A DNA stretch of 64,000 bases from Macrostomum lignano (lineage: Eukaryota), in NCBI GenBank assembly GCA_002269645.1, contig NIVC01002477.1:19875-83874 (forward strand), in the 5' to 3' direction. Under the pieces are notes generated by a model that was not told the origin of the DNA, made no database searches, and was given only the letters and a program-made list of their open reading frames with translations. Made by a program: the position numbers and the translations under genes. This document shows, piece after piece, positions 2,221 to 58,430 of this stretch (the first letter of the stretch is position 1; each line of letters begins with the position of its first letter).

Positions 2221-2637
2221 GGAATGCGTTGCTGAGCTGTATAAATTTTGAGCTTTTAAAGGTATTTATTTAGCATTTCTGACTGTGGTACTTCCAGTAG
2301 TAAATAGGCACACCTAAATTTGTGTGATCGTTTCCAATTTCCCTATAGGTCCATATACTATACGTAAAGATCTTTAAACTTTCAGCTGATAGTAAGAAAA
2401 GAAATAACTTTTCAAATAAAGACAAGGATTATAAATTTCTACGCAGAATAAGTAAATTGCCAGTGCATTATCAACCGGCAGTGCTTCGCCCATAGAACAC
2501 GGAGAAGGACTCAGAAAGTACTTAGATTCTATAGCGCTGCATACAGCCTATTCATACTCAAAAGACTCTCGACAAAATAGTAATTAAATATAGCTGATCA
2601 GCAGAAACATCCTAAACTCGTTCAGCTTAAGTAACAT

Positions 2638-3966
2638 ATGCACGAGGATTCGAACATGGCTAGCAACTATCAGAAGCTCGAACACGTGCGGGCTCGCTAC
2701 TCCAGGCTTCAGCACCAGCGCCAGCACGTCGAGGAGCAGCAAACGCATGCTCAGCAGCAGAAGCAGCAAAAACAGCAGCAGCAGCAGCAACAACAGCAAC
2801 AACAACAACAACAACAACAACAACAAAATCAGCAGCAACACCAGCAACTCAGTCGCAGTCGCGATCGCCGGTACCTTCTGCCTCCGCCACCGATCCGCAA
2901 TCCTCTACTGGCTTCTCAGGACGTTGATCATTCTTTGCGACGCTTGCAAAGGCAGCAGCACCAGTTCCAAGGCGCACATCTGCAGCAGAAGGAGCCGCAG
3001 CAGCCTCAGAATGAAGCTCAGCAGCCTGAGAGAGAACCTCAGCAGCCTCAAAAGGCAGCTCAGCAGCCTCAGACTCAGAAAGAGCCGCAGCAGCCCCAGA
3101 GTTCAGAGATGTTGCAGCGGTTTCTCGCCAGTCTCCCGTCGACGCCGCCGCCGCCTCTCAGACGGTCGCGCTCGCCGGCGCCCTGGTCGCAACGCCATCT
3201 CGCAACAAAGCTCGTCTCGCTGTCGCGGGCATCCCTCCTGGCTTTCCCTCCGACCACCAACACGGAGGCGGCGGCGCCCCCAGCCGACCAGGCCGCCTCA
3301 CCCGACGTGGCGACGGATGCCGAGGCCAACTCGAGCAGCCTTGTGAGCTCCTCGTTCGACGCCGTGACCACGCTCGACGAGCCGACCGCGACCCGGCTAA
3401 CGCCAGCTCCGCCTCCTGACCCGTCGCCGTCGCCTCGGCAGCACCGCCAGCAGCAGCCGTCGCTACGCCGGTCTCGTCACACCGCGCGGATTCGCAGCTC
3501 CTCGCTGGAGATCCGCTCGATGCCGAGCTCGCCGTGGCGGGAGCAGCAGCGCCAGCCGCAGCTCAGAGACAACCTCACAGCGCCGCCGGTGCCGAAGCCG
3601 AGGTCGCGAAACCACGCAGCCGACGGGCCGAGTCATCGCGGCCGGTCCAACTCGAACAGCCGGCAGCCGGTCGAGCAGCAGACTCCAGTCTGCCAGGTGT
3701 TCCGCGTGACAGACGCGTCTGACGTTTTCAGCTCTCTCGTGACCAGGGAGGATCGCCGGCTGTTGAAAGTCCTCAGCCACTTCAGCTGCCAGGCCGAGGT
3801 TCTGGAGACGCTGAAGCTGCCTCGGCGGTGTCGCGGGGCAATCGTCAGCATCAGCGGGCCAGACTGGCGGCGGCTGAGCTGGTGCGTTGACAGACTTCAG
3901 AGCCTCTTTCCCGAGTGGGAGCTCAAGTTTCAAATGCGCAGCTGCTGCAGAACCCGGCTTTGTTGA
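2638..3966 (+). CDS. PolyQ/Pro-Ser-Arg-rich protein with a C-terminal degenerate KH-like domain (copy A, 442 aa)
   Basis: Uninterrupted GC-rich ORF between AT-rich flanks, with a near-identical second copy at 55947-57266. The last about 85 aa show a KH-like pattern (VFRV..FSSLVTRED..LLKVLSHFSCQAEV..AIVSISGPDWRRLSWCVDRLQSLF). Confidence 0.7.
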   Translation: MHEDSNMASNYQKLEHVRARYSRLQHQRQHVEEQQTHAQQQKQQKQQQQQQQQQQQQQQQQQQNQQQHQQLSRSRDRRYLLPPPPIRNPLLASQDVDHSLRRLQRQQHQFQGAHLQQKEPQQPQNEAQQPEREPQQPQKAAQQPQTQKEPQQPQSSEMLQRFLASLPSTPPPPLRRSRSPAPWSQRHLATKLVSLSRASLLAFPPTTNTEAAAPPADQAASPDVATDAEANSSSLVSSSFDAVTTLDEPTATRLTPAPPPDPSPSPRQHRQQQPSLRRSRHTARIRSSSLEIRSMPSSPWREQQRQPQLRDNLTAPPVPKPRSRNHAADGPSHRGRSNSNSRQPVEQQTPVCQVFRVTDASDVFSSLVTREDRRLLKVLSHFSCQAEVLETLKLPRRCRGAIVSISGPDWRRLSWCVDRLQSLFPEWELKFQMRSCCRTRLC

Positions 3967-55946: not shown

Positions 55947-57266
55947 TCACCTGACCCCGCAGCTGCGCATTTGAAACTTGAGCTCCCACTCGGGAAAGAG
56001 GCTCTGAAGTCTGTCAACGCACCAGCTCAGCCGCCGCCAGTCTGGCCCGCTGATGCTGACGATCGCCCCGCGACACCGCCGAGGCAGCTTCAGCGTCTCC
56101 AGAACCTCGGCCTGGCAGCTGAAGTGGCTGAGGACTTTCAACAGCCGGCGATCCTCCCTGGTCACGAGAGAGCTGAAAACGTCAGACGCGTCTGTCACGC
56201 GGAACACCTGGCAGACTGGAGTCTGCTGCTCGACCGGCTGCCGGCTGTTCGAGTTGGACCGGCCGCGATGACTCGGCCCGTCGGCTGCGCGGTTTCGCGA
56301 CCTCGGCTTCGGCACCGGCGGCGCTGTGAGGTTGTCTCTGAGCTGCGGCTGGCGCTGCTGCTCCCGCCACGGCGAGCTCGGCATCGAGCGGATCTCCAGC
56401 GAGGAGCTGCGAATCCGCGCGGTGTGACGAGACCGGCGCAGCGACGGCTGCTGCTGGCGGTGCTGCCGAGGCGACGGCGACGGGTCAGGAGGCGGAGCTG
56501 GCGTTGGCCGGGTCGCGGTCGGCTCGTCGAGCGTGGTCACGGCGTCGAACGAGGAGCTCACAAGGCTGCTCGAGTTGGCCTCGGCATCCGTCGCCACGTC
56601 GGGTGAGGCGGCCTGGTCGGCTGGGGGCGCCGCCGCCTCCGTGTTGGTGGTCGGAGGGAAAGCCAGGAGGGATGCCCGCGACAGCGAGACGAGCTTTGTT
56701 GCGAGATGGCGTTGCGACCAGGGCGCCGGCGAGCGCGACCGTCTGAGAGGCGGTGGCGGCGTCGACGGGAGACTGGCGAGAAACCGCTGCAACATCTCTG
56801 AACTCTGGGGCTGCTGCGGCTCTTTCTGAGTCTGAGGCTGCTGAGCTGCCTTTTGAGGCTGCTGAGGTTCTCTCTCAGGCTGCTGAGCTTCATTCTGAGG
56901 CTGCTGCGGCTCCTTCTGCTGCAGATGTGCGCCTTGGAACTGGTGCTGCTGCCTTTGCAAGCGTCGCAAAGAATGATCAACGTCCTGAGAAGCCAGTAGA
57001 GGATTGCGGATCGGTGGCGGAGGCAGAAGGTACCGGCGATCGCGACTGCGACTGAGTTGCTGGTGTTGCTGCTGATGTTGTTGTTGTTGTTGTTGTTGTT
57101 GTTGTTGCTGTTGTTGCTGCTGCTGCTGCTGTTTTTGCTGCTTCTGCTGCTGAGCATGCATTTGCTGCTCCTCGACGTGCTGGCGCTGGTGCTGAAGCCT
57201 GGAGTAGCGAGCCCGCACGTGTTCGAGCTTCTGATAGTTGCTAGCCATGTTCGAATCCTCGTGCAT
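55947..57266 (-). CDS. PolyQ/KH-like protein, copy B; probably continues by splicing (donor AG|GTGAGA after 55951)
   Basis: About 99.5% identical to 2638-3945; the apparent stop TGA lies inside a consensus 5' splice site. Confidence 0.7.
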   Translation of the reverse strand: MHEDSNMASNYQKLEHVRARYSRLQHQRQHVEEQQMHAQQQKQQKQQQQQQQQQQQQQQQQQQHQQQHQQLSRSRDRRYLLPPPPIRNPLLASQDVDHSLRRLQRQQHQFQGAHLQQKEPQQPQNEAQQPEREPQQPQKAAQQPQTQKEPQQPQSSEMLQRFLASLPSTPPPPLRRSRSPAPWSQRHLATKLVSLSRASLLAFPPTTNTEAAAPPADQAASPDVATDAEANSSSLVSSSFDAVTTLDEPTATRPTPAPPPDPSPSPRQHRQQQPSLRRSRHTARIRSSSLEIRSMPSSPWREQQRQPQLRDNLTAPPVPKPRSRNRAADGPSHRGRSNSNSRQPVEQQTPVCQVFRVTDASDVFSSLVTREDRRLLKVLSHFSCQAEVLETLKLPRRCRGAIVSISGPDWRRLSWCVDRLQSLFPEWELKFQMRSCGVR

Positions 57267-58430
57267 AGGACGCTTGTTTTTAGAGCCGTTCTTCCTACTT
57301 TTATATTTATGACAATGTGAGGAAAATAAAGGTGCCTAGGCTCTTCACAGAGCTGGAATCGATGTACTTTTAGGCCTAACGAGAGCAAGTTTCTCGCTCT
57401 GTTTAAGGCATTGAGCCATTCTTAAAAAATGGAATAAGACTGCTTTTATAATACGAAAGCGCAGTGTCTGTGGGCTAAAGCTCTAGTATTAAAGAAGGCC
57501 TTACTTGTGGCTATTCGGAGTTTTAAAAATAGTTTTCCTTGTCGAAGCAATTTTGCAGGGATTCTATCATTTAGCGTTCGTGAGGCTACAAGATACAACT
57601 AAAAACCACACTGCACATTTCACCAAGACCCTCGGATCCTGATTGAGCTCTTGGATTCCAACATGAGGGGTCATACGACATTTTTCTAGCTTACAAAAAG
57701 CCACCTCAACCCACTACTGGAATACATTGTCCGGGTACTGCTGCACAAGATAGCAATGCGAAACTGTTCAGCATAAATTGTTTATCTCTTTGAAGTTGAT
57801 GCGTATCGACATACAGCGCGAACACAAAAAGCATTTTATATTTTTCCGGAGCAAAGCTATAAAAAAGGCAAATACGAGCGTAATTTCAAACTAAATCCAA
57901 AGTACTTTCAGACGCACCAGGTCTAAAAATGTGATTATAATTTTTATAGCTTTGTAATGACGAAGCATGACAGGAAGTGCCACACGGTCTGCTTGTTTTG
58001 CTAAACCGGAAAGTATTACAGAGCAAATCATATTTTAGCTATGGTTACAACGAGATGCAGAAGGTAATCGACGAAATCCGCACGATTCGCACAGCGACGA
58101 AATGCTTTCACTTTTCTGTCCTACCCTTTCTCTCCATTTCGTGATCCGTTCAGCCCCTCCCCCCTCCTATACTTAGCGACTGCACGTTAGCGAAATCTAA
58201 TGCAGCCTGCTACACAGTGTTTGGGCCTAACGAAGGAAATGCTGTCAGTACGTCACTTCAGGTGTACGAAGGCTTTCAACCCCTGCGACCCCCACCCACC
58301 GGCATGCTGATAAGCCCCGGCAGTTTCGCCTGTGTGGTTCAAAATGTAAAAACTGGTCAACTGACATTCACTGTTGTTGAACTTCAGTTAAGCGTCAATG
58401 TAATTTCTCGAGTTTGTGCAGTACCGCAGG

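What the first reader, a model, noticed from the sequence alone, without database searches (positions are those of the whole stretch)
2637..57267. Inverted, near-identical gene pair about 52 kb apart with homology limited to the coding exon
Seen: 2637-3945 (+) matches 55959-57267 (-). Homology starts 1 nt before the ATG and stops about 8 nt before copy B's splice donor; the flanks do not align. I see only about six substitutions (T/M, N/H, L/P, H/R and two silent), and the CAG/CAA tract has identical length and codon pattern. Inference: either copy A is a very recent exon-only duplicate that gained a new C-terminus (CCRTRLC*) while copy B is the spliced parent, or this is an older inverted pair homogenised by gene conversion, as in palindrome arms. 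The pair also brackets about 52 kb as a potential inversion substrate.
Basis: partly seen in the sequence, partly recalled or inferred. Interest (0 to 1): 0.7.

Follow-up and report, generated by a model that had tools for sequence, protein, structure and literature searches.

The report
Near-identical inverted gene pair in flatworm
Two copies of a flatworm-specific single-exon gene lie head to head 52 kb apart in the Macrostomum lignano genome and are 99.5% identical only across their coding sequence; this is probably coding-limited gene conversion between old paralogues, a known process, and a recent coding-only duplication is not excluded.

Summary
Window 2637-3945 (+) matches 55959-57267 (-) over 1309 nt with 7 substitutions (4 replacement, 3 silent) and no indels. 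The flanks do not align.

The window is Macrostomum lignano contig NIVC01002477.1, from a hidden polyploid. Two further contigs from the same assembly carry the copy-B locus with its flanks:
- a near-identical haplotig, with copy B''
- a 93-95.5% identical homeologous region, with copy B'

So copy B is the old, syntenic locus. The tree is ((A,(B,B'')),B'), with dS(A-B) = 0.010 against dS(B-B') = 0.061. Copy A's coding sequence therefore came from the B lineage after the genome duplication.

The reading of B as a "spliced parent" is not supported:
- B is annotated as an unspliced 439-aa gene.
- The donor-like GT overlaps its stop codon.
- The two other family members found are uninterrupted ORFs that end 2-7 residues after the same conserved C-terminal domain, which has a predicted KH-like fold.

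Identity starts at the ATG and ends exactly where family conservation ends. There is no poly(A), target-site duplication, UTR or spliced-leader remnant.

I favour ectopic gene conversion onto an older paralogue, as in Drosophila Amy and Hsp70 (about 0.55). A recent coding-only insertion comes second (about 0.3). The decisive test, whether an A-type copy sits at the A position on the homeologous contig, could not be run with these tools.

The parts
2637..3945 (+). Copy A arm of the inverted repeat (1309 nt)
   Evidence: 99.47% identical to the reverse complement of 55959-57267, ungapped.
2638..3966 (+). Copy A ORF, 442 aa, single exon; annotated as a gene in GCA_002269645.1
   Evidence: called gene at L001 10001-11329, 442 residues.
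3946..3966 (+). Copy A private C-terminal tail, CRTRLC plus stop, read from A's own flank
   Evidence: no counterpart in B, B' or B''.
55959..57267 (-). Copy B arm of the inverted repeat
55947..57266 (-). Copy B ORF, 439 aa, single exon, annotated unspliced; the ancestral syntenic locus
   Evidence: Positional counterparts with shared flanks lie on NIVC01000312.1 (B', L004 1411-2713) and NIVC01002656.1 (B'', L005 1056-2364).
55947..55958 (-). Copy B private tail, GVR plus TGA; the donor-like GT (55950-55949) overlaps the stop codon
   Evidence: the same tail is present in B' and B''.
2752..2847 (+). CAG/CAA (polyglutamine) tract of copy A, codons 39-70
   Evidence: pairs I4-I14. It is identical to B except arm position 191.
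57057..57152 (-). CAG/CAA tract of copy B
   Evidence: B' differs here by a 6-nt deletion and three CAA/CAG switches.
3658..3945 (+). Copy A: the conserved C-terminal domain (aa 341-436) with a predicted beta-alpha-alpha-beta-beta-alpha fold; the only part shared with other family members
   Evidence: query residues 340-435 matched; alignment; pLDDT 79, pTM 0.71; weak Foldseek matches to type I KH domains.
55959..56246 (-). Copy B: the same conserved C-terminal domain
   Evidence: Identical protein sequence to A over this stretch.
57298..57305 (-). TATAAAAG motif, whose first T lies 38 nt upstream of the first shared base of copy B; a possible core promoter implying a very short 5' UTR (inference only)
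   Evidence: Read. B' has TAAAAAAG here. No transcript data were available.

Best explanation
A and B are two real, intact, single-exon paralogues of a flatworm-restricted gene. The protein has a long Q/P/S/R-rich, probably disordered N-terminal part and a conserved C-terminal domain of about 95 aa with a predicted KH-like fold.

B sits at the ancestral locus. A lies 52 kb away in inverted orientation, between a bHLH gene and a CCDC158-like gene, and most likely marks an older paralogue.

After the M. lignano whole-genome duplication, ectopic (non-allelic) gene conversion copied the B-lineage coding sequence over A's. The tract could extend only as far as the two genes were still homologous. 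That is from the start codon to the end of the conserved domain. The unrelated promoters, UTRs and C-terminal tails were left untouched. About three substitutions have since accumulated in each copy.

Shown: the identity and its exact bounds; B's synteny; the order of splits; the single-exon structure; the absence of retrocopy marks.

Inferred: that a paralogue already existed at the A site, and that the transfer was a conversion rather than an insertion.
For: (1) Source and context. The window is M. lignano contig NIVC01002477.1. The species is a hidden polyploid with a recent whole-genome duplication, and its assembly holds redundant contigs (PMC10468722; PMC8629364).

(2) B is the old locus. 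B' and B'' share both flanks and the GVR* tail with B. L004 is collinear with window 39236-58690 at 93-95.5% identity, and L005 with window 35068-58319 at 99.4-99.9% over most of that span (down to about 92-96% in its last 3.6 kb, across minisatellites).

(3) Order of splits.
- dS(A-B) = 0.0099.
- dS(B-B') = 0.061 and dS(A-B') = 0.065.
- B-B' flank substitution divergence is 3.3-4.7%.
- B and B'' differ by one substitution in the arm and none in 2.5 kb of flanks.
- Polarised with B', two changes are derived in B/B'' and three in A. A is therefore an independent lineage that left the B lineage after the homeologue split.
- B's synonymous divergence from B' matches its flanks. This points to B as donor and A as recipient.

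(4) The bounds of identity coincide with functional and homology limits. At the 5' end identity starts one base before the ATG. At the 3' end it stops after ...QMRSC, exactly where conservation stops in the other family members (P0004 ...QMRC+7 aa, P0005 ...QLRC+2 aa). A breakpoint pair placed at random would rarely do this. A conversion tract limited by the available homology would.

(5) Precedent. [quoted passage not shown]

(6) No retrocopy marks at A. None of B's 3' UTR, no poly(A), no target-site duplication, and no spliced-leader remnant.
Against: - The key prediction, an A-type gene in A-type flanks on the homeologous contig, could not be checked.
- No residual similarity is detectable just outside the tract. 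There is no rise in divergence towards the tract ends: the outer 105-107 nt at each end are identical. A single complete tract reaching both ends of the old homology is required.
- After the A/B split, replacement and silent changes stand at 4:3. On the longer branches they stand at 3:18 (Fisher p = 0.04, or 0.10 if the polyQ site is dropped). This hint of relaxed constraint fits a newly redundant copy better than two long-standing paralogues.
- GC3 is high (0.74) but no higher than in the neighbouring CCDC158-like gene (0.79), so there is no specific signature of biased gene conversion.
Confidence: 0.55

Rival explanations
1. Recent coding-only duplication. After the genome duplication, a 1309-nt copy of B's coding sequence was inserted at a new site 52 kb away in inverted orientation. 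The route would be DNA-templated repair or replication template switching, or an RNA/cDNA-templated event. The copy picked up a new promoter and a new six-codon tail from the insertion site.
For: - A is nested with B inside the B/B' split, with dS 0.01.
- A's flanks are unrelated to anything near B, B' or B''.
- Replacement changes are relatively frequent since the split.
- A TATAAAAG motif starts 38 nt upstream of B's first shared base. It would place B's transcription start within a few bases of the ATG, so an mRNA-derived copy could begin about where identity begins.
Against: - The DNA route gives no reason for the breakpoints to fall one base from the ATG and at the last conserved residue.
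- The RNA route predicts B's stop codon, its roughly 75-nt 3' UTR with AATAAA, a poly(A) tract and usually target-site duplications. None is present.
- There is no spliced-leader remnant.
- No reverse transcriptase or transposase ORF lies within 10 kb of A.
Confidence: 0.3
2. Assembly artefact. Copy A, or one of its junctions, is a mis-join of long reads in a redundant polyploid assembly, and the genome has no such inverted pair on one molecule.
For: - Mlig_3_7 is a fragmented PacBio assembly with many redundant contigs (PMC8629364; PMC10468722).
- A 274-kb contig duplicates the part of this 84-kb contig that was fetched, window 35068-58319.
- A 1.3-kb repeat is a plausible place for a mis-join.
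Against: - A carries three private substitutions. It keeps the ancestral state at two sites where B and B'' are derived, so it is not a misplaced copy of B or B''.
- Both A junctions join to unique sequence. A mis-join inside the repeat would still need real loci in which non-B flanks meet the coding sequence at these same bounds.
- There are no indels or frameshifts in 1309 nt.
Confidence: 0.07
3. B is a spliced multi-exon parent and A is a copy of its first exon only.
For: A consensus-like donor, CAG|GTGAGA, lies 8 nt past the end of identity in B and is conserved in B' and B''.
Against: - B is annotated unspliced at 439 aa.
- The GT overlaps the in-frame TGA stop.
- Family members P0004 and P0005/P0006 end 2-7 residues after the same domain, and each is one uninterrupted ORF on its contig.
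- Identity ends 8 nt before the donor and not at it.
Confidence: 0.05

Closest known systems
[quoted passage not shown]
   Same: Two paralogues in inverted ('palindromic') orientation. The coding sequences are nearly identical within a genome and more alike than orthologous or homeologous copies. The flanks evolve independently and are unalignable (PMC3924832).
   Different: - The spacing here is 52 kb, with at least six other genes between the copies, not a few kb.
- Only one genome was examined, so repeated conversion in separate lineages is not shown.
- The pre-duplication age of the A locus is unproven.
- The gene is an orphan of unknown function.
Drosophila Hsp70Aa/Ab and Hsp70Ba/Bb palindromic pairs
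   Same: Intronless genes in inverted pairs, homogenised by ectopic gene conversion (PMC3924832).
   Different: Hsp70 is a highly conserved gene and its pairs are tightly linked. Shared polymorphism has been shown there and was not tested here.
Primate Y-chromosome-type palindrome arms
   Same: Inverted near-identical sequences on one chromosome, with arm-to-arm conversion as the supposed homogeniser.
   Different: Palindrome arms are tens to hundreds of kb long. They include non-coding sequence and have short spacers. Here identity covers only 1.3 kb of coding sequence, with a 52-kb unique spacer.
Processed retrocopies (retrogenes)
   Same: A gene copy lacking the parent's promoter and flanks, placed at a new site.
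   Different: There is no poly(A), no 3' UTR, no target-site duplication and no spliced-leader sequence. The copy stops before the parent's stop codon.
Type I KH domain (hnRNP K KH3, FUBP1, Nova, PCBP2)
   Same: The predicted beta-alpha-alpha-beta-beta-alpha topology of the C-terminal domain. Foldseek TM-scores reach 0.5-0.67 when normalised to the KH targets.
   Different: There is no GXXG loop and no Pfam KH hit. The PDB profile search gives no KH match, only one insignificant hit at E 1.6. Foldseek E-values are only about 0.01, and the top hits are an unrelated enzyme sub-domain. This is a similarity of fold, not a shown family membership.

Membership tests
Coding-limited concerted evolution by ectopic gene conversion (Amy/Hsp70 type) | Paralogues within a genome are more alike than each is to its orthologue or homeologue | tested here: met
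   dS(A-B) = 0.0099 against dS(B-B') = 0.061 and dS(A-B') = 0.065. The tree is ((A,(B,B'')),B').
Coding-limited concerted evolution by ectopic gene conversion (Amy/Hsp70 type) | Identity is confined to coding sequence and the flanks are unalignable | tested here: met
Coding-limited concerted evolution by ectopic gene conversion (Amy/Hsp70 type) | Both loci predate the divergence used for comparison (an A-type copy at the A position in the homeologue or in sister species) | not testable with these tools
   The A-equivalent parts of NIVC01000312.1 and NIVC01002656.1 could not be fetched.
Coding-limited concerted evolution by ectopic gene conversion (Amy/Hsp70 type) | Shared polymorphism between paralogues, or mosaic tracts | tested here: inconclusive
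   Only seven differences exist. They are evenly spread, with no mosaic segment in A that resembles B' or is highly divergent. No population data were available.
Processed retrocopy | Poly(A) tract and the parent's 3' UTR at the 3' end | tested here: not met
   Identity ends 12 nt before B's stop. No A-run follows copy A.
Processed retrocopy | Target-site duplication flanking the insert | tested here: not met
   The 5' flank ends ...AAGTAACA and the 3' flank starts TGCAGAAC... There is no direct repeat.
Processed retrocopy | 5' UTR or spliced-leader sequence of the mature mRNA is present | tested here: not met
   The SL 3' half (sequence from PMC8629364) has no match near A or B. The one 3-mismatch hit, at 49538, is at chance level.
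Plain segmental duplication | Homology extends into non-coding flanks | tested here: not met
Palindrome with homogenised arms | Long arms including non-coding DNA, with a short spacer | tested here: not met
   The arms are 1309 nt of coding sequence only and the spacer is 52,013 nt.
Type I KH domain | beta-alpha-alpha-beta-beta-alpha topology | tested here: met
   AlphaFold2 model: E5-11, H15-22, H27-35, E39-48, E52-61, H64-77; pLDDT 79. The model rests on a 3-sequence alignment.
Type I KH domain | GXXG loop between helices 1 and 2, and a sequence-profile match | tested here: not met
   The loop reads VTREDRR, with no glycine. Pfam gives no hit at E <= 10. The PDB profile search gives no KH hit.

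The most novel reading that the evidence does not exclude
Copy A is a newly born gene made by a coding-sequence-precise copying event, for example RNA-templated double-strand-break repair or reverse-transcriptase template switching on a B mRNA with an almost leaderless 5' end. The event would have dropped a promoterless ORF into a new regulatory context 52 kb away, where it gained a new C-terminal tail. It would date to between the whole-genome duplication and the haplotype split.
Probability: 0.15. Interest if true: 0.6.

Novelty: new member of a known kind. Interest (0 to 1): 0.3.

Why it matters
If the conversion reading holds, this is a clean flatworm example of concerted evolution restricted to a coding sequence. 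The species' recent genome duplication supplies built-in controls: the homeologue and the haplotig date the last conversion.

It also bears on annotation and gene counting in M. lignano. Near-identical paralogues can be mistaken for redundant contigs or collapsed during deduplication.

The 1.3-kb inverted identity is long enough to mediate a 52-kb inversion by non-allelic recombination, so the locus is a candidate structural polymorphism.

If A turns out to be a new insertion, the coding-precise bounds would point to an unusual copying mechanism worth following up.

The gene itself belongs to an uncharacterised flatworm-restricted family whose only conserved part has a predicted KH-like fold.

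Tried and rejected
- **Homologue searches.** Three homologous-protein searches (full protein, C-terminal 287 aa, 3-sequence domain alignment) returned nothing, not even the query. The exhaustive HMMER search gave only two relatives.

- **Reaching the A-equivalent site on the other two contigs.** All routes failed:
  - Exact-sequence cluster look-ups of A, B, B' and start-codon variants found them absent from the collection.
  - I tried to rebuild the 975-aa CCDC158-like product next to A so it could be looked up. The eight 3' exons are well defined. More than 350 different 5' exon chains satisfy the length and frame constraints, so no exact sequence could be fixed.

- **Ancient flank homology.** A few short collinear patches in the 3' flanks looked suggestive by eye. 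They are not above dinucleotide-shuffle and mismatched-flank controls. Rejected.

- **Retrocopy of a trans-spliced mRNA.** No spliced-leader remnant, poly(A) or target-site duplication. Rejected.

- **Transposon capture.** No transposase or reverse-transcriptase ORFs within 10 kb of A, and A's flanks are not repeated in any sequence held. No support.

- **cDNA-clone contamination.** The shared segment begins TATGCACGAGG. From my own knowledge, GCACGAGG resembles the adaptor remnant of some cDNA libraries. The same bases sit in collinear genomic context in B' and B'', and the match is only 8 nt. Rejected as chance.

- **GC-biased conversion signature.** GC3 of A and B is 0.74, no higher than the neighbouring CCDC158-like gene at 0.79. 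Uninformative.

- **RNA genes.** Rfam and tRNA scans of the window found nothing.

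
Full report
**Observation.** The reported repeat is exact. MAFFT, the repeat finder (pair I1) and blastn all give 2637-3945 (+) against 55959-57267 (-). The arms are 1309 nt long, ungapped, 99.47% identical and 52,013 nt apart.

Identity begins at the T before the ATG and ends after ...ATGCGCAGCTGC. The two reading frames then run on into unrelated sequence. Copy A ends CRTRLC* (442 aa, 2638-3966). 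Copy B ends GVR* (439 aa, 55947-57266).

There are seven substitutions, four replacement and three silent. The CAG/CAA tract is the same in both copies.

The flanks do not align by any test:
- blastn of 12 kb against 16 kb finds only the arm.
- Local alignment scores of 260-1000-nt flanks are no better than dinucleotide shuffles or deliberately mismatched flank pairs.
- 16 kb around A matches nothing else in the window or in two related contigs.

**Source.** Exact-protein look-ups place the window on Macrostomum lignano assembly GCA_002269645.1, contig NIVC01002477.1. Window base 1 is record base 19875, and the window ends at the contig end.

M. lignano is a free-living flatworm and a hidden polyploid with a recent whole-genome duplication. 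Its Mlig_3_7 assembly holds many redundant contigs (PMC10468722; PMC8629364).

Both copies are annotated in that record as single-exon genes of 442 and 439 residues with no Pfam family.

Neighbouring genes:
- a bHLH gene about 3.5 kb upstream of A, just outside the window
- a CCDC158-like coiled-coil gene (about 6.06-15.6 kb or more, minus strand)
- a GOLPH3 exon (40926-41378)
- a 197-aa gene (47977-48570)
- a Grp7_allergen-domain gene (about 52.2-53.1 kb)
- a PI-PLC X-domain exon (63214-63966)

**What the gene is.** Pfam finds nothing. An exhaustive HMMER search of 1.84 billion representative proteins finds only two relatives. Both are unnamed and come from read-archive assemblies. They match only residues about 340-436.

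All of them end within 2-7 residues of the conserved ...Q(M/L)R(x)C motif. Each is a single uninterrupted ORF on its contig: 560 aa in a 5-kb contig (L007) and 385 aa filling a 1.3-kb contig (L006).

AlphaFold2 on the three-sequence alignment gives a confident small domain (pLDDT 79, pTM 0.71) with beta-alpha-alpha-beta-beta-alpha order. Foldseek finds weak matches (E about 0.01) to type I KH domains such as hnRNP K KH3, FUBP1, Nova and PCBP2, behind an unrelated enzyme sub-domain. There is no GXXG loop and no sequence-profile match to a solved KH domain.

I therefore call it a flatworm-restricted domain with a KH-like predicted fold, following a long Q/P/S/R-rich region. I do not call it a KH protein.

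**Is B spliced?** The donor-like CAG|GTGAGA, 8 nt beyond the end of identity, is real and is conserved in B' and B''. Its GT overlaps the in-frame TGA stop. The deposited annotation is unspliced. The family's proteins all end at this point. No missing downstream exon needs explaining.

**History, from two other contigs of the same assembly.** A neighbouring gene's cluster members led to two contigs:
- NIVC01000312.1 (locus L004) is collinear with window 39236-58690 at 93-95.5% identity. This is the level expected for a homeologous region. It carries copy B'.
- NIVC01002656.1 (locus L005) is collinear with window 35068-58319. Identity is 99.4-99.9% over most of that span and falls to about 92-96% in the last 3.6 kb, across minisatellites. 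This is a haplotig or very recent duplicate. It carries copy B''.

Each carries its copy at B's position, with B's 5' and 3' flanks and B's GVR* tail. B is therefore the old, syntenic locus. Neither contig shows a rearrangement breakpoint at the B copy.

Within the 1309 nt:
- B and B'' differ at one silent site.
- A differs from them at six more sites.
- B' differs from all three at 21 sites plus a 6-nt deletion in the polyQ tract.

Polarised with B', two changes (T36M, H326R) are derived in B/B''. Three (P254L and two silent) are derived in A.

Nei-Gojobori estimates:
- dS(A-B) = 0.0099 and dN = 0.004.
- dS(B-B') = 0.061 and dN = 0.006.
- B-B' flank substitution divergence is 3.3-4.7%.
- There are no substitutions in 2.5 kb of B/B'' flanks.

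So A's coding sequence left the B lineage well after the homeologue split and before the B/B'' split. B's coding sequence shares the history of its own flanks, so B, not A, was the source.

A's private changes, and its retention of two ancestral states, also show that it is not a misassembled copy of B or B''.

**Mechanism.** One transfer of at least 1309 nt of B-lineage sequence to the A locus is shown. The open question is whether a homologous gene was already there.

I favour that it was, with ectopic gene conversion onto an older paralogue:
- The bounds of identity are the start codon and the last family-conserved residue. These are the limits of homology expected between old paralogues whose UTRs, promoters and unconserved tails have diverged beyond recognition.
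- Random DNA breakpoints would land there only with very low probability.
- An mRNA-derived copy should carry B's stop codon, its roughly 75-nt 3' UTR with AATAAA, a poly(A) tract and usually a target-site duplication. None is present.
- There is no spliced-leader remnant.
- There are no transposon or reverse-transcriptase ORFs nearby.

The pattern matches the classical Drosophila Amy-p/Amy-d and Hsp70 inverted pairs. There, concerted evolution is confined to coding sequence while the flanks evolve independently (PMC3924832).

Points against, or left open:
- There is no gradient of divergence toward the tract ends.
- There is no detectable old homology just outside the tract.
- Replacement changes are relatively frequent since the split: 4:3 against 3:18 on the longer branches, Fisher p = 0.04, or 0.10 without the polyQ site. 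This fits a newly redundant copy somewhat better.
- A TATAAAAG motif starts 38 nt upstream of B's first shared base. It would place B's transcription start within a few bases of the ATG. An RNA-templated origin could therefore explain the 5' bound, though not the 3' bound.

My estimates are about 0.55 for conversion of an older paralogue, 0.3 for a recent coding-only insertion and 0.07 for an assembly problem.

**What could not be done.** The decisive comparison is whether an A-type gene sits in A-type flanks on the homeologous contig, near record position 402 kb, and on the haplotig, near 28 kb. It needs sequence these tools could fetch only through an exactly known annotated protein within 10 kb.

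The only such gene next to A is the multi-exon CCDC158-like gene. Its eight 3' exons are clear, but its 5' end is ambiguous, with more than 350 chains meeting the 975-aa constraint. Cluster look-ups of A, B and B' failed.

**Verdict.** This is a real, verified, near-identical inverted gene pair whose identity is limited to the coding sequence. B is ancestral and unspliced. A's coding sequence was copied from B after the genome duplication. The best explanation is a known process, coding-limited ectopic gene conversion. A recent coding-precise duplication is a live alternative that one alignment would settle. Interest is modest.

Noticed in passing
window 6063-18743, minus strand (CCDC158-like gene): Nearly every intron of this coiled-coil gene is filled by its own minisatellite. 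The periods are 21, 21, 21, 24, 35/72/107, 8, 16-17, 16, 23, 21 and 65 nt, in arrays of 0.2-1.2 kb. Several arrays are open in all frames and inflate the ORF list.
   Followed up: partly
window 13660-14683 and 27301-28333: A second, older inverted repeat pair of about 1.05 kb. It is 75% identical overall, with 84-89% blocks. It contains CCAAT-like and TATAAATA motifs. One arm lies in an intron of the CCDC158-like gene. It is not concentric with the A/B pair. It may be a dispersed element or an old duplicate.
   Followed up: partly
window 39700-40914; L004 18852-20361; L005 16700-17220: The 61-nt minisatellite next to the GOLPH3 exon differs in copy number between the window, the haplotig and the homeologous contig.
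   Followed up: no
window 49648-51474 (+): A 608-aa uninterrupted ORF with several hydrophobic segments. It has no Pfam hit and is not among the called genes of the deposited annotation. The GOLPH3 exon at 40926-41378 is also not among the called genes. Annotation of this contig looks patchy: B'' on the haplotig encodes a protein identical to B and is not annotated either.
   Followed up: partly
L001 5743-6546 (-), about 3.5 kb upstream of copy A, outside the window: An intact 267-aa single-ORF bHLH transcription factor gene (Pfam HLH, E 8e-17) that is not among the called genes.
   Followed up: partly
window 44188-44951 and about 35540-37078, compared with L005: Two segments of about 0.76 kb and 1.5 kb are present in the window but missing from the otherwise 99%-identical haplotig. 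These are structural differences between near-identical contigs.
   Followed up: no
window 18284-18519 and L004 17779-18019: A 240-nt dispersed repeat (88% identical) shared between an intron region of the CCDC158-like gene and a non-syntenic position on the homeologous contig.
   Followed up: no
arm positions 108, 514, 762, 829, 978 and 1204 (window 2744-3840 / 57160-56064): Five of the six polarised substitutions since the A/B split are G/C to A/T. This is as expected for a GC-rich coding sequence (GC3 0.74-0.81) decaying under AT-biased mutation.
   Followed up: partly
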